Positions 11,008 to 36,391 of a stretch of DNA of 64,000 nucleotides are shown piece after piece (positions within the stretch are counted from its first letter, which is position 1; the number at the start of each line of letters is the position of its first letter). The notes beneath the pieces are model-generated. The model did not search any database. It saw only the letters and a list, made by a program, of their open reading frames with translations, and was not told where the DNA came from. The translations under genes were made by a program, and so were the position numbers. The stretch is from IMG/VR virus record IMGVR_UViG_3300017763_000002, positions 1-64,000 of that record. One strand, written 5' to 3'.

Positions 11008-11009
11008 AA

Positions 11010-12570: not shown

Positions 12571-12644
12571 AGGCGATTCCGGCGTCAGCCGATACTATTA
12601 TAATTATTTATAAATTAATATTATTTATTGAATTGATATCGCCT
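12571..12644 (+). ncRNA. candidate small structured RNA
   Basis: TG-extended TATAAT at 12555-12563; 7-bp terminal stem AGGCGAT/ATCGCCT; internal CGGC-GTCA-GCCG hairpin; no ORF. Confidence 0.3.
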
Positions 12645-12665
12645 CAAACTGATAGGCATATAATT

Positions 12666-13394: not shown

Positions 13395-13404
13395 TACTAT
13401 AATA

Positions 13405-13428
13405 TACACATGCAAAATTAATAGTGTA
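13405..13428. promoter_or_regulatory. divergent pair of GTGTA motifs
   Basis: Minus strand GTGTA(13409-13405)-10nt-ATG 13394; plus strand GTGTA(13424-13428)-11nt-ATG 13440. Confidence 0.65.
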
Positions 13429-13439
13429 AAATATATTAT

Positions 13440-14495: not shown

Positions 14496-14496
14496 A

Positions 14497-17063: not shown

Positions 17064-17069
17064 AGCTCC

Positions 17070-17090
17070 TGTGTAAATCTATATTACACA
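17070..17090. promoter_or_regulatory. overlapping face-to-face GTGTA motifs (palindrome TGTGTAA-N7-TTACACA)
   Basis: Sits in the 31-bp gap between divergent starts 17063(-) and 17095(+). Confidence 0.6.
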
Positions 17091-17094
17091 AGAC

Positions 17095-18189: not shown

Positions 18190-18726
18190 ATGAAAATTTT
18201 AGGCAAAAACGGTTATGTTAGAGATGTTACGGACGCTGATGTTTTAGAGCTTTCGGCTCATCCACGAGACGTAGACCAAAGGCATTCTCAGTATTTAGGC
18301 TGGGAAAATTACCACGAGCACATAATTAATACTTTTCATTCTTCTAAGCGGAGTTTAGCCTTTTGTTTCAGCGATGGAACTTTAGTCGGATGTACAGGAG
18401 TGCACGACTCCCCACACGCCCGAGTCGGAGGCGTCTGGGCATTAGGAACTAAAAACTCTTTAGATATTCTAGACTTCAAAGGCAGCTTAAAAAAAAGTTA
18501 TGGCAATTTAAAGTCTATTTTAGGTGTTTATGAATTTATGAAAATATCCAGGGAGCATTTCGATTGGCTTTTCGGAGAAGATTTTGATGTTTTGTTAAAC
18601 ATTGTTGAAAAAAATAACAAATTAGGACAGAGATGGTTGCGTTTTTTGGGAGCAGAAATCACGCCTAAAGACGACCGCTTTTGTCAAGTAACATTTTATA
18701 AAAATGGGCGGCGGAGTACATATTGA
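18190..18726 (+). CDS. GNAT-fold protein similar to T7 gp13/DUF2833
   Basis: LLNIVEKNNKLGQRWLRFLGAEI matches the N.V...N....RWL..LG.F pattern; GTGTA at 18164. Confidence 0.55.
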   Translation: MKILGKNGYVRDVTDADVLELSAHPRDVDQRHSQYLGWENYHEHIINTFHSSKRSLAFCFSDGTLVGCTGVHDSPHARVGGVWALGTKNSLDILDFKGSLKKSYGNLKSILGVYEFMKISREHFDWLFGEDFDVLLNIVEKNNKLGQRWLRFLGAEITPKDDRFCQVTFYKNGRRSTY

Positions 18727-21700: not shown

Positions 21701-24700
21701 GAGACTTCGTCTGAAGTTTATTACTTACTGTCAAACCTAGACTCCGAGCAAGATTCAAACGATGTTATTTCAGAAAACATTGTATCTCAAACAATGTGGA
21801 AAGATATTTCAGCAGCTGAATGGAATAACGGTTCAATAACAACCAGTAAACTGGCGCACTATGGCCTGCTCCCTACGGGTCAATTTAATAAAAGAGACGT
21901 TTTCGGCGCAGGAACATATGCTTATGACCTTTCTTTTGAACCTTATTACAAAGTTGGTGATGCAGTTGTAATGAGGCAATCTGGCGTTGATGTATATAGG
22001 CTTAAAATCAAAGCATTTCACTTGATTGATTTTTCTTTAATTCCTGCCAGCTATACTGATGGAGGTAGTCTAGAATCTGCTAGCAGGATAAAACCAGATT
22101 ATTATTATTCTTCAAACATAAATTTAACAGGATCTTCGGTGCAAAACTATAGTTCTACCACCAGCTTCCACGGGCTAATTAGATCTCAGTGGTGGCAGCC
22201 TGTCGCGAAAAGAACAGGGGCTTTAGAAAGGGGATACCCCGATATATACGGAAACACAGGCTCTTACTTCGTGGTTCCAAAAAGCTTTGATTTCCTTCAT
22301 CTAGAAGATGGAATTGCCGAAGTGGCTCAACAAGCCACAGTCGACTCTACTATTAAAGTATACTTTGATGAGGTTAAAACTTTCGACTTGAGGGGTACGC
22401 AATACTACTGGACAAATGAAGTTAAAAATATTAGCTCAAATATGATTAATGCTTTGCCAAGTTATGGAAACGAAACGGAATTAGAGCCAAATTTAGTCGC
22501 AGAGCTTGAGCACCCTTATATTGATTTTGATGTTTTTGGGGCAAGTTGGGATGACGGCGGAACGACATCTCCGAATTTACTACAAACATCCACAACTGGG
22601 CATGAAGCTGTAGAGTATTTTAAAAGCTGGCTATATTCAAGTTTTGACGTTCAGCTAGCCAGAGACTTTGGAGAGCCTAAAGGTAGCAGCGTGAACCTTG
22701 ACGCTATATTGTCAAGTAAGTTTGAATTTGTAAAATACTACAGTTTTTATAATCCCACAGTTACTTTAAAGTATCAAATATGCGACGCATCTAATAATCC
22801 TATTGGTAGCGAAATTGATTATGTTGAAGGGAGTGAAATAGAAATCGAAAAGGGGCAGAGGATAAAATTAATCCCAAAATTAATTAAAGATGATAATAGT
22901 GAAATTAGTACTTTTTCATTGATGTGCAATTCTTTTGCAAAAAATAATACTATTGGACTTTTTCTAAGAACCCCTTTGGATAGCAATTATAAAGAAGTAG
23001 ATTTTTCTTATACTCATGTATCATCTTCTGTATCCGAGCCGCCTATTGATTCTGATGGAATAAGGGTTCCATATTATACGAACAAAGAAATTACTAGTGG
23101 GCAATTGGCTTTTCCCGCGCAAACCGGAGGCGCATATAGCGTTACTGCAGACCAAGCTAAAACCTATGCGAATGGAAATATTGTATCTTATGGGGCAAAA
23201 ACTTATGAATTTTATGTAGATGATGCTGATTGGCAATTTGACGCAGACATTGAAAATAATCCTGAAATAGCTCCAGGCAGATGGCACAGAAGATCCTGGA
23301 AAAATCCAGTGACATTGACCTACGGGGGAATTGCTCCTGAAAATACTCACTATAGAAGTTCTGGAGAATTTTTCCGCACGACAGAACAAGGCGGGGTGCG
23401 GGCTTCGGCGGAAACAATAACCCCCACATTTTCCAGTTCAGCTTTCACCCTAACTACCAACTTGCAAAATCTACTATTCGATTCTGCTATTGCATTTGGA
23501 CCTTATGGTCAAAATCTTTTACTATCTACCATAGATCAAGCTTATGAGGAAGTGGCCATAAAAGAAACTCTATTGAGTAGGTTTTATAAGTCTCAAACAT
23601 TGCACGATCAATACGGAGAAACTGGATCTGCAGAAGAAAAACTATTATCATCCGCACCAAAATGGAGGAACGTTTCAGGGCCAGAAGGCTCAATCACTGA
23701 GAACGAGATTCTTGGAATTGAGTGGTCTGCAAATAATGTTTACGCTCAGGGAGAAATTGTTGAATTTGGAAATAAATTATATATTTCTACCAAAATTAAT
23801 TCGTCTGTAGACCCTGCTTCTGAGCCGTCAGAGTGGAAAATTGTTCAACCTTGGCACCAAGACAACCATTACATTCCCGGGGATTTTGTTTATATATTTG
23901 AAGATGAGCTTGTTTTATCTTCTGATTCTAACGGAAACCCTCTTCCAACCTTAAGAGAAAACATTCAATTAAAAGGCCCTAGCTCAGGAGGAAATAATTC
24001 CTTTATTTATCCTTCTTGGTCAAAACACAAATACTATCATATAGGAGAAAAAGTTATTAAAAATTCAGCAATATACATATGTATCGCTGCAGGTATTGCG
24101 TCAACAGAATTAGAATTTAATCAAACTTTTCAATTAACTGCGGAAGCGGTTCCTGCACATCCTAATTATGGAGGTAAATATGCTTTCTTCGTTTGTGAAA
24201 AAAATATTTCTCCTGGGAGCGGAGGGCATGACCCGAGAAGATTGAACGTTCTAACTTCCATGCACGGAGATGATGACATTTTAATTAGGGCTAGCGATAA
24301 TTTATCTAAAGCTTTTAATCAAAATGACGATATATATTTAGATTTTACATATCAGAACGGGGATGCATTTAAGGTTAGCACAAAAAATATTAGCCTGTCT
24401 TTGTTCGGTTATAATTCTGCATCAAATATAGACGAAAGAGATTTTTTAACTCAAATTAATGCAAAACCAGAAATTGCAGAAGCGCATGCATCAACCTTAT
24501 CTGCGTGGTCTACTGGGTCTGAGGGGGAGGGTTTTATTTCAACTGGAACATTGAATATAAAAATAAAAGTTACTAATCCAAATCCATCAAGCGTAATTGA
24601 TAGAACTTTTACTCCCGCTACGCCACCTTCAGATTCTACCTGTCAAACATTTACTTCATATTCTAACTTGTTATGTAGTAATAAATTTTTCATTAATAAT

Positions 24701-27700
24701 GGAAAATTATATGCTTCTGGTTTAGATAGTGGTGAGTTAGGTTTTATTGGATTAATGGATAATTCAGAATTTCAAAATACGGTGTTAGGTAATAGTACCG
24801 AAGGTTCTCAGCACAGATCGTATAATAAATTTTGGGCGCTGGAAGGAATAGGAACTGATACTGAAAATCATAGGGTAAAGATTTTTGAAAATGGTAGTGG
24901 CGGCATTAGTAGTTCAGACCAAAATGAAACCATATCTAATGATCAATCAACTTTTGTAAATTCTGAAGGAGGAAACACAGTATTTATTTGCGGAGGAAAA
25001 CTTTATGGAATGGGTCACAATCAGGGTTATTCTTTAGGGTTGTGCGCTACTTCATCAAGCACATTTGGATTAGGTAACCGATCTCAAGGCTACAGAAAAG
25101 ACGGTAATGATGATCTTGATAAACAGAGAAAGAGCGAAGCTGTGCAAGACTTTTTTGAAGCATCCTTGCATTTCGATTCAGATTATTATATTAATCTACA
25201 AGTCAATCCTGGCAGCACAATCTATAGCCTTGGAGACAGTCAGCAACAATTTAGTACAGATATGAGCACAGATCTTGTTGCGTGGAACCATTTCACTAAA
25301 AAAGGTTTTTATCAATCAATTAATGACGAATGGTCTTTAATAGGATATACTAAAAAAGATGCGAACTTCTGGGGTAGTACGTCAAATCAAATATCCCAAC
25401 TTACAAGCGATTGGTATTTTGTTGAACCTTATAATTCTAGCTCTTGGATATCTCATCCAGGATCAATGGAAGCGACAGCTTTATTTACTCCTAATTATAT
25501 GCCTTCTGATTTTTGGCAGACAGGAGGAATACACGCATACAATTTAGACCAAAAGACACCTGCAGGTAGTTGGGGCGTAATGAATCTAGCAAACCTTGAC
25601 GCTTACTTTGAGTCGAGTATTTTTGAAAGGATGGATAAGCTTATTGAAGACGAAGATTATTTTAATGCCTGGAAGAACAATATGGCTCAATATAAATATG
25701 TTGAAAATTCAAGCGTTTATCATGGAACAGTTGATACATCTTCTGGATCTCAACCTAGGCTGGGCTGGAACGGTATACTCATAAATGAAAATTCTTTAAA
25801 ACGTTTTTATGACATGGGCGACTTCGTGACTTCATCAACATGGATGAGCCAAATGAGGATCGGAAGAACAGTTGCTATTTCTGGTGAAATTGATGGATCT
25901 GATTCGGGCTTTAAGCTGGCTACGTCTCATGAAAATGGAGTTGCTAGCCTAAATCCAGTATCAAGCCCAGATTATAGTTACTATAATAATTCCCAAACTT
26001 ATGGTTATGACGGGAGCATGGGAAAATGGGCTAAGGTATTCACTCATAATAAATCACTTTATATTAACGGCAAACCCTTTTGGGATCCAGTGCTGGGAGA
26101 ATCAGAGCACATCGTGATTGATACTATAACTGGAGAATATAATGCAGGAAATTCTGGTTCCGATAACCGAGCGACTCCCCTAGGTATTTATAAATTAAAT
26201 TCTGAAAAAAATATTTCGTTCGGGAATTACCCTAGAAATACCAGGCTAGAATCAGATTTACAAATAATTATTCCAAACAATTTAGGAATTAGTAATTTAC
26301 CTGGAGGAAAAAGAAATATTGATGGTCTTGGTAACGCAAGCAAGGAAATTATTCCTGCGAGAACATATGTTCCGTACGCGACTAAATTAACGGACGAAGA
26401 TGTAACTTGGGCTGCGACAAACAAGTATTCTACATTTTACATTAACCCCCAAGGGCAAGTAAAAGCTTTAGGTTCAGTCTGCGCTTGTCCTTTTTATAAA
26501 ATACAAGGATTAAGCGTTCCGCAATCTTTTGAGTTAACTCCTGGCGGAGACTTCGGCGGTTTGATGGGCGTAGAGGGTAACTATTCGTCTCCAGCTGTAT
26601 CTATAAATTCATTTGATGCTTTTGGCTCACTTACAATTACTGCAGATGACGCAAGCCCTGTGTTTAAAAATGATAATTGGGCTTTAATTCTTTCTGCGGC
26701 GGGAACTACCTCTAGTAGTAATTTACAAACTCATGCAGCTGATGTATTTAGTGGAGATGACATTTATTTCGGATCAGATTCTAGCGAATATATATTTAGA
26801 GATCAAATATCCCAGGAAATTATTATTGAATCTCAAATTACTGCGTCTTTATATGGTCAAAATTTGCTAAAAGTTATGTATGATGATAGCAGCTATAAAG
26901 TTGCAGCCAATAGTTGGATGATAAGATTTACAGAGAAAGGGGCGGGATTAAATGGCAGTGATATAGTTTCAGACTTGAGATGGTACGCAACTAGTTACAA
27001 TCATTCTATTTTAGTTAGAGCTGTTTATTTATTAGTATTAAGGAGAGAGGCTGATTCTCTTGGACTCAGTCATTTTTCTGGACAAAACCACTATGGAGTT
27101 AATATGACTCTTTATCAGCTGATTGGAGCATTAATGTTAAGCGAAGAATTTATAAGTAATGATGCTGCTAGTTTAACTAAACGATATGTAATAGATGCTA
27201 ACCCAGAATCTCCGCAGATTTCAAACGATCCCAGGGATTGTTTTCCGGCAATGAAAAAAATGATGAAGATATGGAATCATTATGGAAATACTTCGTTTCA
27301 ATATTGGGATGGAGATTCAAACATGAGCACTTCTCACATGCTGCGGATTTCTAGTGAATACATAGGAGCTATCGTAATTAATAACTGCGAACGAGAAGAA
27401 GTCAACGGTATATATCGCCCGTCAAAAGGATGGGATGATAATGATTTTAATAGTACTGCAGATAGATCTTGGTACGAGCACGCTCATAATCAAGGAGGTA
27501 GGGATGATGATAAAGGTATATACGTAAGCGATAAAAACACTCAATACGGAAAAATCTTAATTTATTGGGATGCTAATCTTGATATTTGGAGAATGCAGTA
27601 CTCTGATTTTTGGCTGCAGGATACTACAGGAGATGGACTCAGGGCTCAAAGATTAATTGGAATGCAAAAACATTATTACAACGCCAATGGAGATTTGGTT

Positions 27701-30700
27701 AGATCCATTAAGAGTAATATCGGAACCCCGCAAGATGTTGATGAATGGTACATCGGCACAGGAGAATGGCTTACATCTACAGAGCCTGAAACTGTTGATG
27801 TATTTAGTCAACCTAATGATTTCATTGATTCAACCAGGGTAATCTATGCGCCACCAGAAAACTCATTTATTAATAATCTCCATGGGCCTACCAGAATGTC
27901 TATTGTGCCTAAGCTACTAAATAAAACTCCAGGATCTGCGGATCCAGATGCAATTTTCGACAACATGAATTACGCTCAACAATTCAATAATTTTGGATCT
28001 CAAATTCCTGATCGAAACGGCGGGCCTAGCGCTTTCGTTAACGATGATTTATACCAACTGGACCAACAGATTTATCGCTTAGTAAAAAGGTTTACTGATG
28101 ATGGCCGAGCATTTTCTCCAGTTCATTTTGCAGATAGATTTGCATCAAGGACTAGGCCTGGGGGGTTAGAAGCTCTAAGGCCTGATAATAACGAAGTTTA
28201 TCCACGCATCGGTGCGGGGCTTGATTGGAATTTGTGGCCAGAAGATGTAGATTTTGTAAACGAATTTTCTCTTAATGAACAAGCTATAGGTGATCTACTG
28301 CACTTTCAAGGCGGAGCGCTAAAAGAAACTTTAATATATACTTCTTTAGATACAAAAGCCGACGCAAATATTACTAACGATGGATTAGATCTATGGCGAT
28401 TAAATTTAACACAAAATTCCAATATAACTTTTAAATCTAAAATATTAAAAAATTCTGGAAATTTTAGTGATCCTTCAAAAGTAAAATTTGGAATGTATAT
28501 ATTTAAGGACATGGGTTATGGTTACGTTAATGTTGCTGATTTTCAGATGCAGTGGCCCAATAATGGGCTGCCTAGTGGAGGTTATGGCGAATGGGCTCCT
28601 GTGAACACATATATAACACCTGATAGGTATTCTACTTTTATTGGCGGTGGAGAAACCGCAGCGCTAGCTGACTATTCAGATTTATTTACCGATCAATACT
28701 CTCTAGTAAAAGCTTTTTTTGCAAGATATTATAGGCCTGATAATTATGTATATTCCGACGCAGATCCTAATTACAATGCAACTGGGACCAGTGGGTCACT
28801 ATGGACGATTAATGGAGATATAATAACAAATCGCGGCTTGAATTGGACTCAGATGATCGACGTCCGAACTACTCTGAGAAACGCAGATGATCATTTTTTC
28901 GATAGGGTTATGAGTAGAAGTTTTGAAAACAGACCTATATTTCCAGGAGTGTCAGCTAACAGTTTTAACATGGGAACGCAAAATCCTTCTGGTGGATCGT
29001 ACGTAAGTCTTGATGCAAATAGTTTTGTAGATAACGAGCTAGTTTTAGATGTTAGCATTAACAACGCAGCCGCTGGAGGATATTATGTTTTACTTGTAGC
29101 TGAACATGCTTTTGATGCACCTGTACAAGATTTGCAATTAATTCAATCACAATACAATATTAATACAACTGCTGTGGCTACTTCAGGAACTTCAGAGCCA
29201 ATGTTTGTTAGCGAAGCAACAACCGAACATATCAACGGACAAGATGCTGAAACTAATGAACCTATAACTAATGGAGATACCCAGGCATTCACTAAAGATC
29301 CTTTGAAATATATAGCGAGAAATTCTTGGAGTTATAACGATTATAGTGCCTTTGTTAGTATGCTGGACGTTTACGATTGGCACGCAGACTTAACAGATTG
29401 GCAGTACTATTTTGATACTCAAGAAGCAGGCCTAGAGCAAGCTTTGAGAGATCGTCCCAGCAGGTTAAATATGAACCAAGCTAATCTTGGCCTGGCGCAT
29501 TGGAATAGTACTCTTAGTCTCGAGGACCGAAAAAAAAGATCAGAGCACATAAGGGGCTTGTTTGAGAAAAGGTTTAGCGCTAAAGCTACTTACTTTAGAG
29601 GTTTTGAGTCGATGAATCATAATGCAGATTGGGTTTACGATGAAATATTTGGATGGTCTACAAAAGCAATAGGAACTCATTCTCCTGCTAATAATGGCGT
29701 TTCTAACATTTATACAAGCTCTGCTGGATATTATTTTAGTAGTAGATATAATAATTGGTTTGAATTATCTAGTGCAGATAAAACAAAAAGAGATAATGGA
29801 GAGGCATTTGCTGTTAAATTTCTTAATCATGATTTTAATTTTAATTTATTTATTGAAGGGCAATCTGAATTTAATTTAGTATGGCCAGAGTCAAATTCTG
29901 CGACCTTTACTTATTTTGGTGCAAACGGACAAATGAACACTACTACAGGATTACGAAAGCCAGTAAGTAATACATATTCTCAATTAGATCAATATTCATA
30001 CAATACAGGTGATGTTGCAAAAATTGAATTAGCAGAAGGTAATGATCTCTTTAGGACTTTATATTTTGTGTCATTAAAAGATAATAACACTTCTTCATTA
30101 GGTTTCCTGGACAGTTTAGTTCAAGACGAAATCAAGGAGATGAATATTCCCGCGAGAAAAGGATTGTGCCAGAGATATGCTGTAGAGACTCATACGCTGT
30201 CTAGCGACTCCAGCTTGTCTGGGCCAATAACTATTTACAATCCAGCAGATTACAGCAACGACAAAGCTGTAAGGGTGGATATGGGTGAGTCTCACGCAAT
30301 AATTCTCACAGAGTCAGGAAAAGCGTACGGGGTTGGAGATAATTCCCAAAAACAAATAGACAAAATTTTTGAAAGATCAGATCAATTTAGCGGCGTCAAC
30401 CAAGACTCAGCTTTTGGTCCCAGTGATTATGATAATTGCTTATATCTCGTAGCAAATAAATCTAATCCAATTAGCCCTTATTTATCAAGAAGTGATTGGG
30501 ATGCAATCGAAAAGCCTGCGTTTCCTCTGGAGCGTTGGAAATACGGTCAGTCTTATAGTAGTGGAGAGAAAGTTTTCATTAAAAACGAAACATATAGTGC
30601 TATTTCAGCAGATGATTATGAAGTTTCAGAATCAAAGAAATCAAATGTTTTATTAAATGGCTTTTCTGGGTCTCCTTATTTAATCGACCATGAAAGATTT

Positions 30701-33700
30701 TTTGATTCTGGTGAATCTAGAATAAGAAATGAAACTATCTTTGCAAATACAATAGGAGAGCTATTTAAAAGAAATTGGAAAAATGGAAGAAATGCAGTGG
30801 GCGGCGGGGGCAACAGGGTGGCGGTTTATTGCGGGAAAATTGACGGAATAACTCACGACACATCTTTAAAAAATCATTACAGAGAATCGAGGGGAGACGG
30901 TTTCTTTTTAACTCAAGACTGTTACCTAAAGCCTCATGAAATTAAAAGCTTTTTTAAACAAGGCTCTGTGGTAAATAATTTATTTATAAAAAATATTAAA
31001 TGCTCTGGATATGGTTCGTTATTCCTTGACGCCTCAAATAATATGTATGGAATTGGAAACAATGAAATATCAAAATCAAATCAATCTCAATATACTGGAG
31101 GAGAAAGTATTGGGACTGTTTTTGGTTTAAATTCAGACTTTGATTACGGCCCTGAGTTTATTAAAGAGTCAGTATCTTTTATGCATAAGGCTGGAGATTT
31201 AGTTTCGTATATTTCACATGGATATTCTTACAAAGCTGGAGGTCAAAATTTATATCCCTACTTCGAAAATTATCAAAACGCGGGAGCAGAAGCGATCATG
31301 CTAGATTCTAGTGGGAATCCTATTTCGGCAAAAATGGTTTTCCTAGAAGGCCCTAGGTTTTGGGATAATAGGGACTGGTTTTTAAAAAGAAGTTTGTCTC
31401 AAAAAATAAATAATAATTTTTATTTAAAGGATGAACACTATCGGCCCGTGGACCTAGAAAGATGCACCCCGCACACAAGAAAAGGGCAGTTTACATCTAA
31501 TGTATTTGGATTACCTGTAATTAATGATTTTATACCTGAATGGAAAGACGAAGGGCAGTACCACGAGCTTATAAAAGGGGGTCAAATTATGGGCTCAGAT
31601 AAAAATTATTTACAAAATGACCGAGAAGATGATCCAACTTGGTTTAAATCTGTAGAAACTTACGGAGCTTTGTCTAGCGCTTTTGAATCCAAGCAACCAA
31701 GCCTTGTGACTTATCAAGGCAAAATATATCAATGTATACAAAGACACGGTCACGTATTTGGAGACGAAGCAAGCGACAAAATTCCATACGATAAAAACTT
31801 AAGCAAAAAATTTACTGTTGATTCTGAAGGAGTTTATACCGCAAGAGGCAGAGTCGGGGCGGGAATAATCCCTGGAGAATCGGGATCTGAACTTTATTGG
31901 CAGGAGGTATCTGATTTATCAAATAAAAATATGATTCAATTTTTAACTCAAAGATTAAAAATATTTAACTTAAGTTCAATGATTGTTGTTTCAGAAGATA
32001 ACAGTTTATACATCAAGGGGTTTAATTTTGGTTTATCTAAAGAGGCTGACGGAACTTGTTCTGGTATAAAAGATAACTCTGAATTAATTGCTTTTGAAAG
32101 AGGCGCGGATGTAGGCTCTAATTCTCCGGAGCAAAGACTGATTATAGAAAAATATTTTAAGGATAAGTATTTATATACAGATTTAACTCCGTTCAATACG
32201 TCTATAGATACTAGGCCCACCGTGCCAAAATGGAAAAGTTTTATAAATTTGATGTCTGAAAAAATTGAAGGATGGACGCATCCGAATCCAGTAAATGAAA
32301 CAGGACAATCTACTTTGTCAGGGGGAAGATCTTTGTCCCCTTTTGACTTTTTAGGCAATAATAGAAAAAGAGGTCAGTATTTTGTGGGGATTGATCCCAG
32401 CGAATATATCGATGTAGAAAATTTATCTTTAGAATTAAATCCCACATCTCCAATGCTATCCTGGGGAGAAACAAATTCAGCGCTGAATAATTTATTGTCA
32501 AATAATGTATTCGGGTTTCTCGAAAGTTGGACAGAGATTTTTAGAGCGATGGAAGATTGGAAACAAGGCGTTTCCGCCCACTATAGACAACCAAGACCGT
32601 TTATGTTTGACGGCTCTTTCTCTGAGTGTTTGAATCTTTCCTGGACAACTGTTGACCCATTTGCAAACTCTTTATTTTTAGCATACAGAGGGGCTTATCA
32701 GCCACCTGTAGAAATATCAGGAACCGAGACTGATTGGCTTTATCATCATTCTATAGTATTACCAAGTTCAATTGATTTGTCGACCTTATCAATTAATGTT
32801 AATACCAGGAATAGTATAACAAGTTTGGAACCAAATCAAAGAAACGGCGGATCTATAATGGAAATAAACACAGATTTATCTGACGCGCGTTACAACAGTT
32901 TTTATCCAGAACTTTTAAGATCTCCAAACCCAACATTATTTAATTGGTGGGACTTAATCAGAGACGCTGGGTCAAAAATAAAATACACAGCTTCATTTAA
33001 TACGGACGAAGCAGTAGAAAATCCATCTGCAGAATTTTCATTCATGGAGTTATTTTTCTCTCAACATAGCCCTAGCTCATTTCCCGTAAGTGATTCGGCC
33101 GAATTCTCCGCAAAACCACATATATCTGAGTCGGACAACCCTTGGAACGATAGAAACTCTAGTTCGTTTTACAATCCCTGGGGAAGCTGTAATTTTGTGA
33201 ACAATATATCAAATCAAACCCAGTGGCACATACAAGACGACGCGCCTACTCTTCAATCTTTTTCTGTATGGAATGCCAGGACAAATAGCATTCATACTCC
33301 GACTCTTAGGGCAGATGCAGATTCTCTTCAGAGCATTCTTAATTACAACTACAATCAAAGTTTATACGTTGATTTCTACAGTACTTACCTTAATGCGGCA
33401 AATAATAATAGCACTGATCCTGAGCTACCTAAATTCGTAGAGCTTACCGAAGCTTTCAAGCAGTTACAGTTTTTTGATACCGCGTCGCATTACGCTTTCT
33501 TTGTTAATTCTTATTTGCTAGATCCAGCGTCTTTACCTTTTGGAGGCACAATACCTAAATTTGGATATCAGAATAACAGCGGGTCAATAACATCCGCAGC
33601 ATCGTATAATACTGGAGAAAGAGTGTTCCATAAGGGATTCGCTTTTACGTCTTTAATAGATTCAAATAACTCAACGCCATCTTTTGGTGACGTATATTGC

Positions 33701-36391
33701 GCAAATCCTATTAGTGACAATAATTGGAAATACGAAGAGCCCATGGATTTACACAGATTTAGATCGCAAATTGGCATTGCACACGGAATTTCTATATCTA
33801 GATTAATCATGAACAAAAGAAACGATGAAGACCCTTACTTTCGGGCCGGATTTATATCGCAGCAAACAATAGGTCATTCTCAGATTGATTTTAGCTTTGT
33901 ATCTAAAAACCCTTCAATGACAAATTTTCATAATTTTAAAAATTTAAATTTATTAAGAAGGGCAGATTGGGAGCAAACAGATGAAAACAATAAACTTCCG
34001 TACGAGCATTTAGAAAACAAAACTCATCCGCTTGCAGAAGGAGAAGACGTAAATGCAGATCCTTTATTATCTCAATCTGCAAATAAAAAAGGTTTTAATT
34101 TACCCGACTGGTTTAGGGTAAGGTCCGAGCATATTAGTGATCAAGTAGCGGTTTTACAGGCGGCAATCGACGCAGCCGAAGCCAGCCAAGGAGGAAGTTG
34201 GGCAGGCAACTTTTACTTGAAACTATGGGTTAATACTGTAATAGAAAAGTTCATGAAGGCCTACGGATATAAAGACCAACGCTTAATTAGTAGACCCGAT
34301 CTTTCATTATCTGGAGTCGGAGAAAGCATTAATTGGGATTCAAGCCAAGCAACATCTGATGATCATTTTGATTTTGTAACAGACGAGGTTGGGCCATATC
34401 CTGTTTTTGATTTTACTCCAGATTTAGCCAACGGGGAGCTCGGGGGCTTTGCTATACCCGATGGGTTTGGAGACATTCCTTTCATTATTGACGGCAATCT
34501 TCGTCGAGGAATTGCGTCCACAGAAGACAACTTAGCTAATAGCGTTAGCTCTGTGGTTCCAACCTCAAATGGCGTAGATTATGGAACCTTGGGTCAAGCT
34601 TATAACGCTGCCTTTAAGGGTTATGACGAGGCTAACAATTTTTATGAAACCTCGGTGCCAAATACAGTTATAAAAAATGTATACTATAAGTTTGCTAAGC
34701 CTGCGTTTCCAGCTTTATATGGAAACGTAACAGACTACATGGAAGCAATATCTGAAATGCATAAATACGGATTTTCAAACTTTACAAGCGGATCAGAATT
34801 AACAAATACAATATGGGGAAGGGAAATTAATCATGATTTTTATTGTTCGTCAAAAATAAATTCTCAATTTTATGCTTCAAATATACCAAACTATTTAGAA
34901 GACAAAACTCCTTCAGGAGGCGCCTCGAGATTTGACTGTGATGACAATTATATTACTGAGAGCGAAGATGATTATGATGCTGCTTTTGAGGCTGGAAAGT
35001 GTTATTTTAGTATTAACGCTAATTATAGTGGATTTTCTTTAGTAAGTGATGCTGGTGGCAATGATAATTCAATATATATTAGAAATAGAAAAGAGTTTTT
35101 TGAGAGCACATCTTCGGCTTCTTCATACAATTCGAACGGAGAACCCGAAAGAAGTACTCACTTAGAAGTTCCTTACAAATACTTTAATTGGTTAGGAATA
35201 ATTTATGAAATCGGCGGCGTAAAACAGCAAAAAATAGTATTCCACATTGATGACATGAATTCTTATTCATTTGAAGCTGGATACCCATATTTAATCTTTA
35301 ATCAAATTTATTTTTGCAAAAAGGATTTTGACGCAGGATCGAGCACGACGCCAATAAACGAAAGGGTGCCCCGCCCTGGAGAGAGTAATGATGCATTTGA
35401 ATTTGTCGTCTCACTTCAACCCACTTCGCCGACGGTTCCTTCTCAGAAATTGTATGATAAGAATTTAAATGAAATTAACGACAAATGGTATTACTTTGAA
35501 GACTTCCCTCATGCAGTAAAAAACTTAAGGCATTTAAGATTTGAGGTTAGGAAAATTTACCCAACTTCTACAAATATTCATGGTGAAGATCAATTATTCC
35601 CTGATGTTAATACTCCAGATGCCAACGGCAATCCTATATCTATTCTTCACCAAGGTTTTTTAAATCATGGATCAAACGAAACTTTGGGTAATCACGCATA
35701 TGTTTTAAGCGGTGGGTTAGCGGGGCTTGTATTTAGCGACTATTTTGACGCTTTTAAAGAAGGTTCTTCTTTTTATGGAAACAGAGCTTATCGTAGTAAA
35801 TTTAAATTAGGAGATGAAAATACTTCTGTTCATACATCTGCTATACCTTTTTCAATACCGCTACAAGACGAAGATGCTTACTTTGTTTCAGAGCAACAAG
35901 CGAAAGATGCCGCAGAAAAATATGTAATTTATTTAGCAAAAGAAAGAGAAGGTTTAGATTATGTTTGGTTTGACCTGCGAAGTGAGCGCTGGGTAGTCGG
36001 AAGAAATTGGATTCATGAAAAAATAGAAACAAATTTTGACTCTGAATCTGAGGCAAGATCCCGAGCACAGGTCCTAGGTTATTCAGATCAAAGTTTAATA
36101 TGCTGGGAAAAAGAATATTTTCCGTGCGTATACAAGGAGGCTGGTGGGGCAATAAATAAAGATCTAGATAAATTTATAGAACATGATGTAATATACATTG
36201 GCGGAAAGGAGCACCATCAGTGCTTAGCGAGAATTCATGGCGTTACTGAAAAATGGAAACAAGAGATTGAATCCAACAATCCAGGTTTTATAGAAATTAA
36301 TAATGGACAATTATTTTTCGCTTTGTTAGGAACTCTTACTCCTGTGAGTGATTGGACTATATTGACAAATATTACTTTCGATATAAGTTAG
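18704..36391 (+). CDS. giant 5,895-aa putative virion fibre/adhesin with CBM5/12-like, RCC1-like and DUF4214-like segments
   Basis: Uninterrupted 17.7-kb ORF; about ten W-x4-Y-xx-G-x2-V repeats; RCC1-like VDMGESHAIILTESGKAYGVGDNSQKQ; DUF4214-like VRAVYLLVLRREADSLGLSHF. Confidence 0.8.
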   Translation: MGGGVHIDFNLDFLSADPTSNSAKRTLFGHSRAAMPGAMPTWYGRFRQYAVYEVGHLVLHADDADDFLARNERSAPSLSNLYVCVNTNRAGDFPPPSSTSWRSLADLSNDYDTGARSVPRATFLTSGRMSDNEICLNLFEFIDLNFVICNSTFTPLNSGLDPIAIKPRVGASFGGGVTRTRREVDLNSSQGGNLERFTVDYPEYAISGTGQIPLPSRKFGFAATSLNAQMGSEIEALNPTNDPLDPDLTANSFDSSVVYEVGSVVNYFPIADNQSLESEVFDTTNHPKLSVCIKNLESPARDQNGTYDTSKLPWNQNSTYWRSYTSAANRPNSSLSSVYEYLVNKKNRFPAFTVNPDPVKNLSNQTVIRNKSRIRMNDFGGTSNIYGHFFVHWATALQPYSRSKCRTWYSGASSQSGPHQDGQYDIFIYTKNLKKDHGGQPRLAVTFGKTTAIKFLSVSGVSTFSTGTISSNTINKYLKDDNFNSSMIQEVSSEADIMHYQYSNLVPSYYMGRGYVHARRRGGVHPGSSKGDRNLGKFILFIEDLLSRQRIEMVTPQIFSNGNPRLGLHGHSIPTQDWGETGATRNYQYTKEIVDGGGLTDLLSTKTTATTAAQPMHYLIVGNALSATDQVANQGISFQNRFVDRAFRPIMLRTDALSEERFFHILGLMQTGFVGVDAELFKNITDQNIDNLSGIENKIWMDLGETFHGSQGNPLFKSIASKIGSFKENTLTNLNDLASWSSSSQYSPQQITKITHSDYWTAGGDQGSANFVGPWYYDVQYNSGSVVYLWQDGQKTYYTAAASSKSVSPKEFFTFYRASVANSNKTPIYNSSIWKRVSIPKGNIGFLKGFVSTINPYTSLQVLANSNLWPPSGRRASKIGFGWKRTLSEEGILNQITESNQESYLSSWTEGAEYQAGDIITVQSGPIVALAPDGEYYTYEQWVSRFNLSSQEEEEVSLLFSEAEAVNPLYAFKCLKNTSEADVNDPKSYVGLIPGFIPNETSSEVYYLLSNLDSEQDSNDVISENIVSQTMWKDISAAEWNNGSITTSKLAHYGLLPTGQFNKRDVFGAGTYAYDLSFEPYYKVGDAVVMRQSGVDVYRLKIKAFHLIDFSLIPASYTDGGSLESASRIKPDYYYSSNINLTGSSVQNYSSTTSFHGLIRSQWWQPVAKRTGALERGYPDIYGNTGSYFVVPKSFDFLHLEDGIAEVAQQATVDSTIKVYFDEVKTFDLRGTQYYWTNEVKNISSNMINALPSYGNETELEPNLVAELEHPYIDFDVFGASWDDGGTTSPNLLQTSTTGHEAVEYFKSWLYSSFDVQLARDFGEPKGSSVNLDAILSSKFEFVKYYSFYNPTVTLKYQICDASNNPIGSEIDYVEGSEIEIEKGQRIKLIPKLIKDDNSEISTFSLMCNSFAKNNTIGLFLRTPLDSNYKEVDFSYTHVSSSVSEPPIDSDGIRVPYYTNKEITSGQLAFPAQTGGAYSVTADQAKTYANGNIVSYGAKTYEFYVDDADWQFDADIENNPEIAPGRWHRRSWKNPVTLTYGGIAPENTHYRSSGEFFRTTEQGGVRASAETITPTFSSSAFTLTTNLQNLLFDSAIAFGPYGQNLLLSTIDQAYEEVAIKETLLSRFYKSQTLHDQYGETGSAEEKLLSSAPKWRNVSGPEGSITENEILGIEWSANNVYAQGEIVEFGNKLYISTKINSSVDPASEPSEWKIVQPWHQDNHYIPGDFVYIFEDELVLSSDSNGNPLPTLRENIQLKGPSSGGNNSFIYPSWSKHKYYHIGEKVIKNSAIYICIAAGIASTELEFNQTFQLTAEAVPAHPNYGGKYAFFVCEKNISPGSGGHDPRRLNVLTSMHGDDDILIRASDNLSKAFNQNDDIYLDFTYQNGDAFKVSTKNISLSLFGYNSASNIDERDFLTQINAKPEIAEAHASTLSAWSTGSEGEGFISTGTLNIKIKVTNPNPSSVIDRTFTPATPPSDSTCQTFTSYSNLLCSNKFFINNGKLYASGLDSGELGFIGLMDNSEFQNTVLGNSTEGSQHRSYNKFWALEGIGTDTENHRVKIFENGSGGISSSDQNETISNDQSTFVNSEGGNTVFICGGKLYGMGHNQGYSLGLCATSSSTFGLGNRSQGYRKDGNDDLDKQRKSEAVQDFFEASLHFDSDYYINLQVNPGSTIYSLGDSQQQFSTDMSTDLVAWNHFTKKGFYQSINDEWSLIGYTKKDANFWGSTSNQISQLTSDWYFVEPYNSSSWISHPGSMEATALFTPNYMPSDFWQTGGIHAYNLDQKTPAGSWGVMNLANLDAYFESSIFERMDKLIEDEDYFNAWKNNMAQYKYVENSSVYHGTVDTSSGSQPRLGWNGILINENSLKRFYDMGDFVTSSTWMSQMRIGRTVAISGEIDGSDSGFKLATSHENGVASLNPVSSPDYSYYNNSQTYGYDGSMGKWAKVFTHNKSLYINGKPFWDPVLGESEHIVIDTITGEYNAGNSGSDNRATPLGIYKLNSEKNISFGNYPRNTRLESDLQIIIPNNLGISNLPGGKRNIDGLGNASKEIIPARTYVPYATKLTDEDVTWAATNKYSTFYINPQGQVKALGSVCACPFYKIQGLSVPQSFELTPGGDFGGLMGVEGNYSSPAVSINSFDAFGSLTITADDASPVFKNDNWALILSAAGTTSSSNLQTHAADVFSGDDIYFGSDSSEYIFRDQISQEIIIESQITASLYGQNLLKVMYDDSSYKVAANSWMIRFTEKGAGLNGSDIVSDLRWYATSYNHSILVRAVYLLVLRREADSLGLSHFSGQNHYGVNMTLYQLIGALMLSEEFISNDAASLTKRYVIDANPESPQISNDPRDCFPAMKKMMKIWNHYGNTSFQYWDGDSNMSTSHMLRISSEYIGAIVINNCEREEVNGIYRPSKGWDDNDFNSTADRSWYEHAHNQGGRDDDKGIYVSDKNTQYGKILIYWDANLDIWRMQYSDFWLQDTTGDGLRAQRLIGMQKHYYNANGDLVRSIKSNIGTPQDVDEWYIGTGEWLTSTEPETVDVFSQPNDFIDSTRVIYAPPENSFINNLHGPTRMSIVPKLLNKTPGSADPDAIFDNMNYAQQFNNFGSQIPDRNGGPSAFVNDDLYQLDQQIYRLVKRFTDDGRAFSPVHFADRFASRTRPGGLEALRPDNNEVYPRIGAGLDWNLWPEDVDFVNEFSLNEQAIGDLLHFQGGALKETLIYTSLDTKADANITNDGLDLWRLNLTQNSNITFKSKILKNSGNFSDPSKVKFGMYIFKDMGYGYVNVADFQMQWPNNGLPSGGYGEWAPVNTYITPDRYSTFIGGGETAALADYSDLFTDQYSLVKAFFARYYRPDNYVYSDADPNYNATGTSGSLWTINGDIITNRGLNWTQMIDVRTTLRNADDHFFDRVMSRSFENRPIFPGVSANSFNMGTQNPSGGSYVSLDANSFVDNELVLDVSINNAAAGGYYVLLVAEHAFDAPVQDLQLIQSQYNINTTAVATSGTSEPMFVSEATTEHINGQDAETNEPITNGDTQAFTKDPLKYIARNSWSYNDYSAFVSMLDVYDWHADLTDWQYYFDTQEAGLEQALRDRPSRLNMNQANLGLAHWNSTLSLEDRKKRSEHIRGLFEKRFSAKATYFRGFESMNHNADWVYDEIFGWSTKAIGTHSPANNGVSNIYTSSAGYYFSSRYNNWFELSSADKTKRDNGEAFAVKFLNHDFNFNLFIEGQSEFNLVWPESNSATFTYFGANGQMNTTTGLRKPVSNTYSQLDQYSYNTGDVAKIELAEGNDLFRTLYFVSLKDNNTSSLGFLDSLVQDEIKEMNIPARKGLCQRYAVETHTLSSDSSLSGPITIYNPADYSNDKAVRVDMGESHAIILTESGKAYGVGDNSQKQIDKIFERSDQFSGVNQDSAFGPSDYDNCLYLVANKSNPISPYLSRSDWDAIEKPAFPLERWKYGQSYSSGEKVFIKNETYSAISADDYEVSESKKSNVLLNGFSGSPYLIDHERFFDSGESRIRNETIFANTIGELFKRNWKNGRNAVGGGGNRVAVYCGKIDGITHDTSLKNHYRESRGDGFFLTQDCYLKPHEIKSFFKQGSVVNNLFIKNIKCSGYGSLFLDASNNMYGIGNNEISKSNQSQYTGGESIGTVFGLNSDFDYGPEFIKESVSFMHKAGDLVSYISHGYSYKAGGQNLYPYFENYQNAGAEAIMLDSSGNPISAKMVFLEGPRFWDNRDWFLKRSLSQKINNNFYLKDEHYRPVDLERCTPHTRKGQFTSNVFGLPVINDFIPEWKDEGQYHELIKGGQIMGSDKNYLQNDREDDPTWFKSVETYGALSSAFESKQPSLVTYQGKIYQCIQRHGHVFGDEASDKIPYDKNLSKKFTVDSEGVYTARGRVGAGIIPGESGSELYWQEVSDLSNKNMIQFLTQRLKIFNLSSMIVVSEDNSLYIKGFNFGLSKEADGTCSGIKDNSELIAFERGADVGSNSPEQRLIIEKYFKDKYLYTDLTPFNTSIDTRPTVPKWKSFINLMSEKIEGWTHPNPVNETGQSTLSGGRSLSPFDFLGNNRKRGQYFVGIDPSEYIDVENLSLELNPTSPMLSWGETNSALNNLLSNNVFGFLESWTEIFRAMEDWKQGVSAHYRQPRPFMFDGSFSECLNLSWTTVDPFANSLFLAYRGAYQPPVEISGTETDWLYHHSIVLPSSIDLSTLSINVNTRNSITSLEPNQRNGGSIMEINTDLSDARYNSFYPELLRSPNPTLFNWWDLIRDAGSKIKYTASFNTDEAVENPSAEFSFMELFFSQHSPSSFPVSDSAEFSAKPHISESDNPWNDRNSSSFYNPWGSCNFVNNISNQTQWHIQDDAPTLQSFSVWNARTNSIHTPTLRADADSLQSILNYNYNQSLYVDFYSTYLNAANNNSTDPELPKFVELTEAFKQLQFFDTASHYAFFVNSYLLDPASLPFGGTIPKFGYQNNSGSITSAASYNTGERVFHKGFAFTSLIDSNNSTPSFGDVYCANPISDNNWKYEEPMDLHRFRSQIGIAHGISISRLIMNKRNDEDPYFRAGFISQQTIGHSQIDFSFVSKNPSMTNFHNFKNLNLLRRADWEQTDENNKLPYEHLENKTHPLAEGEDVNADPLLSQSANKKGFNLPDWFRVRSEHISDQVAVLQAAIDAAEASQGGSWAGNFYLKLWVNTVIEKFMKAYGYKDQRLISRPDLSLSGVGESINWDSSQATSDDHFDFVTDEVGPYPVFDFTPDLANGELGGFAIPDGFGDIPFIIDGNLRRGIASTEDNLANSVSSVVPTSNGVDYGTLGQAYNAAFKGYDEANNFYETSVPNTVIKNVYYKFAKPAFPALYGNVTDYMEAISEMHKYGFSNFTSGSELTNTIWGREINHDFYCSSKINSQFYASNIPNYLEDKTPSGGASRFDCDDNYITESEDDYDAAFEAGKCYFSINANYSGFSLVSDAGGNDNSIYIRNRKEFFESTSSASSYNSNGEPERSTHLEVPYKYFNWLGIIYEIGGVKQQKIVFHIDDMNSYSFEAGYPYLIFNQIYFCKKDFDAGSSTTPINERVPRPGESNDAFEFVVSLQPTSPTVPSQKLYDKNLNEINDKWYYFEDFPHAVKNLRHLRFEVRKIYPTSTNIHGEDQLFPDVNTPDANGNPISILHQGFLNHGSNETLGNHAYVLSGGLAGLVFSDYFDAFKEGSSFYGNRAYRSKFKLGDENTSVHTSAIPFSIPLQDEDAYFVSEQQAKDAAEKYVIYLAKEREGLDYVWFDLRSERWVVGRNWIHEKIETNFDSESEARSRAQVLGYSDQSLICWEKEYFPCVYKEAGGAINKDLDKFIEHDVIYIGGKEHHQCLARIHGVTEKWKQEIESNNPGFIEINNGQLFFALLGTLTPVSDWTILTNITFDIS

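What the first reader, a model, noticed from the sequence alone, without database searches (positions are those of the whole stretch)
18704..36391. A single 5,895-aa ORF with CBM-like repeats, RCC1-like blades and a DUF4214-like segment
Seen in sequence: a 17.7-kb uninterrupted ORF, over a quarter of the window (roughly 650 kDa). It has about ten short repeats such as WSANNVYAQGEIVEFGNKLY, WHQDNHYIPGDFV, WSKHKYYHIGEKV and WKYGQSYSSGEKV (CBM5/12-like), dispersed RCC1-like blades near 24.7, 26.4, 30.3 and 31.0 kb, and a DUF4214-like helix set near 27.0 kb. It has no signal peptide, no collagen repeats and no tape-measure periodicity. Inference: a giant multivalent glycan-binding fibre or surface appendage, and the likely acceptor or reader of the neighbouring glycan pathway. 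Most of its length is unassignable by eye and may hold new folds.
Basis: partly seen in the sequence, partly recalled or inferred. Interest (0 to 1): 0.75.

Follow-up and report, generated by a model that had tools for sequence, protein, structure and literature searches.

The report
Giant unexplained protein of marine phage
A real 5,895-amino-acid gene in an abundant, uncultivated 205-kb marine phage: it evolves fast, always sits next to sugar- and sulfate-adding enzymes, is most likely an accessory surface fibre of the virus particle, and over 95% of it matches no known protein family.

Summary
The ORF (18704..36391, +, 5,895 aa) is real. The other five frames carry 327-668 stops. Contigs from two separate studies match a 6-kb central stretch exactly. 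Full-length collinear homologues of 5,875-6,563 aa (about 30-93% identity) occur in many marine assemblies.

The window is the start of a 204.9-kb siphovirus-like phage record. Its tape measure, J-like tip and recognised tail fibres lie 70-135 kb away. The likely host is Verrucomicrobiota.

Only about 2% of the protein reaches a Pfam threshold: one CBM5/12 module, one RCC1 blade and one DUF4214 segment. There are no internal repeats. AlphaFold2 (twice) and ESMFold2 gave no usable model.

The gene belongs to a conserved cassette: a changing set of soluble glycosyl-, sulfo- and methyltransferases, a 178-aa ORF (PHROG 308, "internal virion protein"), the giant, then a 246-aa ORF. This order holds in six lineages. 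Only the N-terminal ~450-750 aa is shared across all of them, and the giant ranges from 2,683 to 6,563 aa. Its composition is closest to this genome's own tail-tip proteins.

Best reading (confidence about 0.45): an accessory virion-surface appendage anchored by its N-terminus. Its presence in virions is untested.

The parts
18704..36391 (+). Giant ORF, 5,895 aa (about 650 kDa), acidic (net charge -3.9 per 100 aa), rich in S/N/G/D, non-repetitive
   Evidence: homologues
18704..20803 (+). N-terminal conserved region, aa 1-700 (33-87% identity to the diverged full-length homologues P0003-P0006). Its first ~450-750 aa are the only part shared with the 2,683-aa and 4,770-aa relatives. Conserved MG(G/S)G start and motifs NRPNSS, RIRM-D-GG-IYGH, KKDHGGQ
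   Evidence: no Pfam match; AF2 pLDDT 29
23720..23839 (+). CBM5/12 module, aa 1673-1712, the only one above Pfam's gathering score
   Evidence: 27.2-31.6 bits, cutoff 26.2
26984..27157 (+). DUF4214-like segment, aa 2761-2818, inside the most variable stretch (aa 2700-2900)
   Evidence: 20.2 bits in context, 25.7 bits alone; cutoff 23.2
30269..30355 (+). Single RCC1_2 blade, aa 3856-3884
   Evidence: 29.7-37.9 bits, cutoff 22; PDB profile E 4e-4 to RCC1
30986..31066 (+). Second, sub-threshold RCC1-like blade, aa 4095-4121
   Evidence: 18.4 bits, cutoff 22
31700..31747 (+). Sub-threshold CBM5/12 core motif, aa 4333-4348
   Evidence: 20-22.7 bits, cutoff 26.2
36056..36388 (+). C-terminal ~110 aa. 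The last ~85 aa are conserved even in the ~30%-identity lineage (VIYIGGxxHxQCLARxxG ... NG.L ... DW), but absent from the 2,683-aa and 4,770-aa relatives
18190..18726 (+). 178-aa 'pre' ORF. Its end overlaps the giant's start by 23 nt. It matches PHROG 308 ('internal virion protein', T7 gp13 type). A ~162-178-aa ORF holds this position in every lineage; homology was shown by alignment for L010, L011, L013 and L014
   Evidence: hhalign against T7 gp13 alone is weak
36411..37151 (+). 246-aa 'post' ORF, starting 20 nt after the giant's stop. Found only in these phage lineages; function unknown (candidate assembly factor)
9007..18150 (.). Glycan-modification cassette: APS-kinase/cytidylyltransferase-like, an HSP20-like stretch at ~9918-10205, three methyltransferases (one TylF-like), a GT34-like enzyme, GT2, a sulfotransferase, a 317-aa unknown, a DXD glycosyltransferase, DUF2827. 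Most products are predicted soluble

Best explanation
The ORF is a genuine gene for a ~650-kDa protein. It is the variable centre of a conserved accessory module: glycan-modifying enzymes, a 178-aa gp13-like ORF, the giant, then a 246-aa ORF. The module occurs in a widespread clade of uncultivated ~205-kb siphovirus-like marine phages that probably infect Verrucomicrobiota.

Most likely the giant is an accessory appendage on the outside of the virion, a fibre or adhesin. It would be anchored by its conserved N-terminal ~450-700 aa domain. The long, fast-evolving, lineage-replaceable remainder would contact polysaccharide on the host or on particles, partly through CBM5/12-type modules.

The two small flanking proteins would help it assemble. 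The adjacent soluble glycosyl-, sulfo- and methyltransferases would decorate it or another virion protein in the cytoplasm.

Shown: the gene is real; the synteny is conserved; the N-terminus is conserved while the rest is replaced; the composition resembles tail-tip proteins; the domain hits are few.

Inferred: location in the virion, anchoring, glycan binding, and being glycosylated.
For: 1. The gene is real and under selection as one piece. Homologues of 5,875-6,563 aa are collinear over the whole length at about 30-93% identity. Contigs from separate studies agree with it.
2. It has the architecture of a receptor-binding protein. The N-terminal ~450-750 aa are shared with the 2,683-aa and 4,770-aa relatives (E 1e-27 and 1.6e-22), and the rest is unrelated.
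3. It evolves far faster than the core genes. In lineage L011, TerL is 75%, PhoH 80% and p352 71% identical, against 21% for the giant's N-terminus and 24% for the post ORF.
4. Glycosyltransferases and sulfotransferases of changing families lie next to the pre ORF and the giant in six lineages. Most are soluble.
5. The closest compositions in this genome are the 1,296-aa minor tail protein (r 0.95), the 3,418-aa fibre (0.94) and the J-like protein (0.92). Enzymes, TerL and the putative portal and capsid proteins give 0.60-0.75.
6. It has a CBM5/12 module, an RCC1 blade and a DUF4214 segment, no signal peptide and no TM helix, and it is acidic.
7. The module is accessory. Sister-clade record G001 (TerL 72%) lacks it at the syntenic place.
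8. There is precedent for phage-encoded glycosylation of virion proteins (Freeman et al. 2023, as cited in PMC11256854).
Against: - No PHROG tail-fibre or other structural family matches the giant, and it shares no domain with this genome's own fibres.
- The recognised tail module lies 70-135 kb away. The giant's neighbours downstream are regulatory or auxiliary genes: Xre, PhoH, a subtilase, GAF, a sigma factor.
- The C-terminal ~85 aa are strongly conserved, which is unusual for a receptor-binding tip.
- No fold, trimer or fibre-like repeat could be predicted.
- There are no proteomic data, and only one CBM passes threshold.
- G001 also lacks every homologue of this genome's tail module, so it may be incomplete.
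Confidence: 0.45

Rival explanations
1. Internal capsid cargo or ejected protein. The giant would be packaged in the head with the help of the gp13-like ORF and delivered into the host at infection, like the T7 core proteins or the N4 virion RNA polymerase.
For: The upstream, translationally coupled ORF matches PHROG 308 'internal virion protein' at E 1.9e-12, with a weak Pfam Phage_T7_Gp13 hit. The module lies 8 kb upstream of TerL, the likely portal gene and the likely capsid gene.
Against: This is a long-tailed phage with a 2,343-aa tape measure protein, which does not need a podovirus-type ejected core. The giant itself matches no internal-protein family. It carries outward-type modules (CBM5/12, DUF4214) and has the composition of tail-tip proteins. 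Its payload is replaced between lineages. Direct hhalign of the pre ORF against T7 gp13 gives only 5.9% probability.
Confidence: 0.12
2. A protein that is not part of the virion and acts in the infected cell or after lysis. It could be a giant scaffold or multi-enzyme working with the neighbouring transferases on a sulfated glycan, or a released adhesin that alters cell or particle surfaces.
For: Its neighbours are enzymes and regulators rather than morphogenesis genes. Conserved polar motifs in the N-domain (D, H, R, N) could form an active site. More than 95% of the protein is unassigned. The module is accessory.
Against: No enzyme family was detected by Pfam, by PDB profiles or in the Atlas. 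The conserved-anchor, replaced-payload pattern and the fibre-like composition fit a structural appendage better.
Confidence: 0.2
3. A polyprotein that is cut into several mature proteins, for example by the S8 subtilase encoded 1.7 kb downstream.
For: It is a non-repetitive chain in which conserved blocks alternate with indel-rich variable stretches. An S8 subtilase gene lies at 38107-39246.
Against: The subtilase is also present in G001, which lacks the giant. No cleavage motif or domain-boundary evidence was found. Bacteriophage polyproteins of this size are not known to me (own knowledge).
Confidence: 0.07
4. An artefact: an assembly chimera or a chance open frame.
For: None was found. Only one third of the ORF was checked against independent contigs.
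Against:: independent assemblies give the same length and order, and there are no joints or indels.
Confidence: 0.01

Closest known systems
Phage tail fibres and receptor-binding proteins with a conserved N-terminal anchor and an exchangeable distal part (for example this genome's own 3,418-aa fibre and lambda J-like protein)
   Same: Conserved N-terminus with a replaced remainder; rapid divergence relative to core genes; S/N/G-rich acidic composition; a carbohydrate-binding module; a small gene immediately downstream, the position where fibre chaperone genes usually lie; no signal peptide.
   Different: No match to any PHROG or Pfam fibre family. No shared domain with the genome's own fibres. 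Located far from the tail module. Conserved C-terminal end. No repeats and no predicted trimeric fold. 5.9 k aa without internal repetition.
Virus-encoded glycosylation of virion surface proteins (mycobacteriophage capsid and tail-tube glycosylation, Freeman et al. 2023; chlorovirus and mimivirus fibril glycosylation with clade-specific gene clusters, the latter from my own knowledge)
   Same: Soluble virus-encoded glycosyltransferases next to a candidate virion surface protein. The enzyme set differs from lineage to lineage.
   Different: Here sulfotransferases, an APS-kinase-like enzyme and O-methyltransferases are included. The acceptor is unknown and no glycan has been observed.
T7 gp13 and the internal virion proteins (PHROG 308)
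   Same: The 178-aa ORF upstream of the giant matches PHROG 308 over nearly the whole profile (E 1.9e-12) and precedes a very large protein, much as gene 13 precedes genes 14-16 in T7.
   Different: The giant has no similarity to gp14-16. The phage is long-tailed. Direct comparison of the pre ORF with T7 gp13 is not significant.
Giant bacterial surface adhesins (RTX/LapA/SiiE type; own knowledge)
   Same: Size class; acidic; carbohydrate-binding modules and DUF4214/RCC1-like pieces.
   Different: Those adhesins are built of tens of tandem Ig-like repeats and carry secretion signals. This protein is non-repetitive, has no export signal and is phage-encoded.

Membership tests
CBM5/12 (PF02839) | Match to the 44-position module at or above the gathering score of 26.2 bits | tested here: met
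   aa 1673-1712 scores 31.6 bits in context and 27.2 bits as a slice. All other candidates fall below the cutoff (22.7, then 13.6-14.5 bits) or are absent.
RCC1 / RCC1-like seven-bladed beta-propeller | Seven contiguous ~50-aa blades; PF25390 whole-domain cutoff of 150 bits | tested here: not met
   One blade passes RCC1_2 (aa 3856-3884). A second, 240 aa away, scores 18.4 bits. WD40_RLD scores 28.8 bits against a cutoff of 150. Nothing was found at 24.7 or 26.4 kb. AF2 gave no propeller (low confidence).
DUF4214 (PF13946) | Score at or above 23.2 bits | tested here: inconclusive
   20.2 bits within a 1,600-aa piece and 25.7 bits as a 91-aa slice. The segment lies in the least conserved part of the family alignment.
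Phage tail fibre / tail spike families (PHROGs) | Significant match to a PHROG annotated as tail fibre, as this genome's other fibres give | tested here: not met
   No PHROG at E <= 0.01 for any of the four pieces. ORFs at 105-155 kb match fibre, J and tape-measure PHROGs at 1e-10 to 1e-98.
Tape measure protein | Tape-measure PHROG match; position between tail-tube/chaperone genes and tail-tip genes | tested here: not met
   The genome's tape measure protein is the 2,343-aa ORF at 127987-135018. The giant has no such match or context.
Internal virion / ejection proteins (T7 gp14-16 type) | Homology of the protein itself to internal-protein families | tested here: not met
   No PHROG or Pfam match for the giant. 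Only the neighbouring 178-aa ORF matches PHROG 308.
Virion component of any kind | Detected in purified particles | not testable with these tools
   There is no isolate and no proteome. Only composition and context speak to this.

The most novel reading that the evidence does not exclude
The giant is the founding member of an undescribed class of phage surface organelle. It would be a single ~650-kDa non-repetitive chain made largely of unknown folds, anchored by a new N-terminal domain and assembled by dedicated gp13-like and 'post' factors. It would be covered with a phage-made sulfated and methylated glycan whose chemistry changes from lineage to lineage. That would give these abundant marine Verrucomicrobia phages a glycan coat or polysaccharide-mimicking adhesin, used to stick to sulfated algal polysaccharide particles or to evade recognition.
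Probability: 0.2. Interest if true: 0.85.

Novelty: new variant of a known kind. Interest (0 to 1): 0.6.

Why it matters
If the reading holds, one gene taking 8.6% of the genome of a widespread marine phage clade encodes a host- or particle-contacting structure unlike any characterised fibre. That clade has at least 593 TerL relatives in IMG/VR, and the giant-bearing subclade recurs in Tara and other ocean assemblies.

The gene is tied to phage-encoded sulfation and glycosylation. This would extend virion glycosylation, known from mycobacteriophages and giant algal and amoebal viruses, to marine phages of polysaccharide-degrading Verrucomicrobiota. It would also offer a large reservoir of unassigned protein folds.

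Even without a function, the family is a clear test case for structure prediction. About 98% of 5,895 residues are unassigned, and both AlphaFold2 and ESMFold2 fail on it despite strong conservation.

Tried and rejected
Structure prediction
- AlphaFold2 on aa 1-1000 with an 11-row alignment gave mean pLDDT 29.2.
- AlphaFold2 on aa 3600-4500 with 12 rows gave pLDDT 36.5; only short CBM-like hairpins reached 60-80.
- Both models were too poor for fold search, so no fold search was run.
- ESMFold2 on a homotrimer of the C-terminal 286 aa gave no answer (pLDDT 47).

Sequence and profile searches
- ESM Atlas on aa 1-2000, aa 1-500 and the C-terminal 336 aa scored 0.5-0.8, which is uninformative.
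- PDB profile searches with six family alignments covering the whole protein, and with the pre and post ORF alignments, gave nothing beyond one RCC1 blade and CBM fragments.
- PHROGs gave no match on the giant.
- Pfam on all 11 N-domain sequences gave nothing.
- tblastn of the N-terminus, the C-terminus and the post ORF against 50,697 isolated-phage records gave no match.
- hhalign of the pre-ORF profile against T7 gp13 gave 5.9% probability.

Repeats and composition
- Self-BLAST and 120-aa window profiles found only marginal CBM-like self-similarity.
- N-x-S/T sequons are not enriched (85 observed against 73 +/- 7.5 expected), and there are no S/T-rich or low-complexity runs.

Context
- Promoter and terminator scans gave counts equal to shuffled sequence.
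- The look-up of encoding contigs refuses proteins over 5,000 aa, and some relatives' records are not held. Context was therefore obtained through neighbouring small proteins and shorter relatives.

Readings rejected
- Tape measure protein, collagen-like fibre, RCC1 propeller, assembly chimera.

Full report

The window is the first 64 kb of an IMG/VR virus record of 204,906 bp, estimated complete by CheckV. ORF 18704..36391 (+) has 5,895 sense codons. An in-frame stop lies four codons upstream of its ATG. The other five frames over the same stretch contain 327-668 stops, so chance is excluded.

No 19-residue window reaches a TM-like hydropathy. There are no collagen triplets and no tandem repeats at DNA level. 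G+C is like the rest of the window.

**Is it an assembly chimera?**

A search of public runs found the central 6 kb (24000-29999) in many marine DNA runs. When four runs were laid on it, single contigs of X1 (viral metagenome, 2019) and X2 (seawater metagenome, 2023; a different study) spanned it without one difference. X3 and X4 tiled most of it, with short uncovered stretches in X3, and showed substitutions only: no indels, joints or meaningful loose ends. One of X1 or X2 may be the source sample.

Only this third of the ORF could be laid. The rest is covered by protein evidence. Six 90%-identity clusters of 5,875-6,511 aa matched the query. Their members come from ENA, Logan, JGI, NCBI and Tara assemblies, and include a second exact 5,895-aa copy. 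A MAFFT alignment of 21 full-length proteins is collinear from end to end at 41-93% identity. A further lineage is 6,563 aa long. It was called as 6,031 aa in an NCBI MAG copy, and is ~30% identical and collinear.

The 28 changed codons in the X3 and X4 contigs (25 of them in X4) split 11 synonymous to 17 non-synonymous. That is compatible with relaxed or diversifying selection in the variable middle, but the sample is too small to test.

**What is recognisable in it?**

Pfam on four overlapping pieces and on 17 slices gave few hits.

| Pfam family | Position (aa) | Score (bits) | Cutoff (bits) |
|---|---|---|---|
| CBM_5_12 | 1673-1712 | 27.2-31.6 | 26.2 |
| CBM_5_12 | 4333-4348 | 22.7 | 26.2 |
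| CBM_5_12 | ~908, ~1484, ~1772, ~3945 | 13.6-14.5 | 26.2 |
| RCC1_2 | 3856-3884 | 29.7-37.9 | 22 |
| RCC1_2 | 4095-4121 | 18.4 | 22 |
| DUF4214 | 2761-2818 | 20.2 in context, 25.7 alone | 23.2 |

Nothing was found at 24.7 or 26.4 kb. These domains cover about 127 of 5,895 residues (2%). PHROGs gave nothing.

Profile searches of six family alignments against all PDB sequences gave only the RCC1 blade (E 4e-4) and non-significant CBM fragments. Self-BLAST found one marginal pair. Profiles of 120-aa windows found only weak CBM-like cross-matches. The protein is therefore essentially non-repetitive.

Three kinds of structure attempt failed:
- AlphaFold2 with family alignments on aa 1-1000 (pLDDT 29) and aa 3600-4500 (pLDDT 36.5).
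- An ESMFold2 trimer test of the C-terminus.
- Three ESM Atlas searches.

I therefore ran no fold search.

**The genome around it**

The phage has a lambda-like long tail:
- a 2,343-aa tape measure protein (127987-135018)
- minor tail proteins
- a fused I/J-like 1,632-aa tip protein
- a 3,418-aa tail fibre
- further fibres at 142-155 kb

All of these are recognised by PHROGs at E 1e-10 to 1e-98. The giant lies 70-135 kb from these genes and shares no detectable domain with any other ORF of the genome.

Upstream (9.0-18.2 kb) lies a block of enzymes:
- an APS-kinase/cytidylyltransferase-like protein
- three methyltransferases, one TylF-like
- a GT34-like enzyme
- a GT2 enzyme
- a sulfotransferase
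- a 317-aa unknown
- a DXD glycosyltransferase
- DUF2827

A tblastn hit to a relative's HSP20 gene also falls here, at ~9918-10205. Most products lack hydrophobic segments. None of the cassette ORFs scanned matched a flippase, polymerase or exporter family. This favours cytoplasmic modification of a protein over synthesis of a surface polysaccharide; that step is inference.

Directly before the giant, overlapping its start by 23 nt, is a 178-aa ORF. It matches PHROG 308 ('internal virion protein') over nearly the whole profile at E 1.9e-12. It also gives a weak Pfam hit to T7 Gp13 (E 0.15), but comparison with T7 gp13 alone is not significant.

Twenty nucleotides after the giant's stop comes a 246-aa ORF of unknown function. 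After that come, in order:
- an Xre-like ORF (on the opposite strand)
- PhoH
- an S8 subtilase
- a GAF protein
- a sigma factor
- a 352-aa ORF
- a beta-helix protein
- an ERCC4-like protein
- TerL
- the likely portal gene
- a 213-aa ORF
- the likely capsid gene

These are followed by ClpB and Pol III alpha on the opposite strand.

**Relatives**

A profile of the first 1,000 aa, searched against 1.84 billion representative proteins, found only 13 proteins. Besides the close family, it found proteins of 2,683 and 4,770 aa and several fragments cut at contig ends. These share only the N-terminal ~450-750 aa (21-27% identity). The remainder, including the C-terminus, is unrelated to this giant, and beyond ~1,000 aa the 2,683- and 4,770-aa proteins are essentially unrelated to each other.

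The gene order is the same in these loci and in the locus of the 42%-identity lineage. A set of glycosyl-, sulfo- and sometimes methyltransferases of changing families comes first: Sulfotransfer_1/2/3/4, GT2, GT25, GT34, GT47, Gly_transf_sug/Caps_synth, Methyltransf_21. Then come a 162-178-aa 'pre' ORF and the giant. Wherever the contig extends past the giant, a 246-267-aa 'post' ORF follows; where it extends further, Xre, PhoH, the sigma factor and TerL follow as well.

In lineage L011 the core genes are 67-80% identical to the window's (TerL 75%, PhoH 80%). The giant's N-terminus is 21% identical, the post ORF 24%, and the pre ORF falls below tblastn detection. The pre and post ORFs are nevertheless homologous across the lineages aligned and are found nowhere else.

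TerL has at least 593 relatives at 70% identity or more in IMG/VR. In sister-clade record G001 (125.7 kb; TerL and the likely capsid protein both 72% identical) the N-domain profile finds nothing. The positive control on the window's own genome gave E 3.7e-177. The interval between the GP88-like gene and PhoH holds 7.5 kb of small ORFs in G001, against 33 kb here.

The module is thus an accessory island. One caveat applies: G001 also lacks all homologues of this genome's tail module, so it may be incomplete.

**Host**

The window encodes DUF1501 and PSCyt2/PSD1 proteins. The 80 best genomic relatives of the DUF1501 protein (44-54% identity) are almost all Verrucomicrobiota. A 207.7-kb relative of this phage sits in an NCBI MAG labelled Verrucomicrobiales. 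This makes Verrucomicrobiota the likely host, but it is not proof.

**Composition as an internal control**

Among all ORFs of 250 aa or more in this genome, the amino-acid composition of the giant correlates best with the tail proteins:

| ORF | Correlation r |
|---|---|
| 1,296-aa minor tail protein | 0.95 |
| 3,418-aa tail fibre | 0.94 |
| J-like tip protein | 0.92 |
| TerL, putative portal, putative capsid protein, ClpB, Pol III | 0.60-0.73 |
| Tape measure protein | 0.70 |

The giant is acidic (-3.9 net charge per 100 aa) and rich in aromatic residues (12.8% F+Y+W). This is soft evidence, but it points the same way as the architecture.

**Interpretation**

The combination has six elements:
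- a conserved N-terminal domain with a lineage-replaceable remainder
- divergence far above that of the core genes
- small dedicated flanking genes
- outward-type modules without an export signal
- fibre-like composition
- accessory distribution

This is what one expects of a virion-exposed host- or particle-contacting appendage. I take that as the best explanation, at about 0.45.

The persistent adjacency to a changing glycan and sulfate cassette supports a functional link. Whether the giant is the acceptor, as the capsid and tail-tube proteins are in glycosylated mycobacteriophages (Freeman et al. 2023, cited in PMC11256854), or a reader of the glycan cannot be decided here.

Several points count against a classical tail fibre:
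- there is no fibre-family match
- the gene lies far from the tail module
- the last ~85 aa are strongly conserved
- no predicted fold is available

Three rivals remain open:
- an internal or ejected protein, suggested only by the PHROG 308 neighbour
- a non-virion scaffold or enzyme working with the transferases
- a polyprotein

**Novelty and score**

The family has no name, no Pfam or PHROG model and no isolate, and its parts and context differ from described fibres. In kind, however, it most resembles a phage receptor-binding or surface appendage. I rate it a new variant of a known kind, with interest 0.6.

Noticed in passing
window 9007-18150: The phage encodes an APS-kinase/cytidylyltransferase-like protein, three methyltransferases (one TylF-like sugar O-methyltransferase type), GT34-like, GT2 and DXD glycosyltransferases, a sulfotransferase and DUF2827. 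Together these look like a self-contained route to a sulfated, methylated glycan. Relatives carry different enzyme sets at the same place.
   Followed up: partly
window 58621-61948 (-): DUF1501 and PSCyt2/PSD1 genes of the planctomycete/verrucomicrobial type sit in a phage genome. The nearest cellular homologues (44-54% identity) are almost all Verrucomicrobiota, which gives a host lead. A 207.7-kb relative is binned in a Verrucomicrobiales MAG.
   Followed up: partly
window 44523-46391 (TerL) and loci L098-L177: TerL has at least 593 relatives at 70% identity or more in IMG/VR, so this is a large and widespread uncultivated marine phage clade. Its nearest isolated-phage TerL matches are only 23-27% identical (Clostridium phage c-st, Bacillus phage Basilisk group, Microcystis phage MaeS).
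   Followed up: partly
G000 105540-135018 (-) and 142370-154757 (loci L004-L006): The same genome also has a 3,418-aa tail fibre, a 2,343-aa tape measure protein (implying a very long tail), a fused I/J-like 1,632-aa tip protein and three more fibre or spike genes. Unassigned ORFs of 1,351, 1,451 and 1,114 aa are also present.
   Followed up: partly
L015 10516-12112 versus L016 10516: In the NCBI MAG copy of the 6,563-aa lineage the gene is called 532 aa shorter (6,031 aa, later start) than in the ENA assembly of the same phage. A frameshift or sequencing error near the 5' end of that copy is likely.
   Followed up: no
window 18704-18715 and homologues: Ten of the eleven N-termini printed, nine of them full-length-start family members, begin MG (mostly MGGG or MGSG); this giant does too. 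About 30 residues later comes a conserved LAGSLP.W / MPGAMPTW motif. An exposed N-terminal glycine may matter for modification or anchoring; the cause is unexplained.
   Followed up: no
loci L185-L187 (records G003-G005): In the sister clade (TerL ~72%), a 242-244-aa ORF is followed by a large ORF of very variable length (840, 1,466 or 2,114 aa) a few kb upstream of the conserved p144-GAF-sigma block. These ORFs are unrelated to the giant by the N-domain profile, which suggests a second variable large-protein slot.
   Followed up: partly
window 51332-56385 (-), 41100-41909, 40147-40743, 38107-39246: The phage encodes ClpB, a Pol III alpha subunit, a sigma factor, a GAF-domain protein and an S8 subtilase with a Pro/Glu-rich tail. 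All but the GAF protein are conserved at 48-65% in the giant-less relative G001; GAF is 40%.
   Followed up: no
window 24000-30000, runs X16-X20: Five marine RNA-type libraries hold 6-8% of the sampled words of the central 6 kb. This is a weak hint of transcription, or of DNA carry-over.
   Followed up: no
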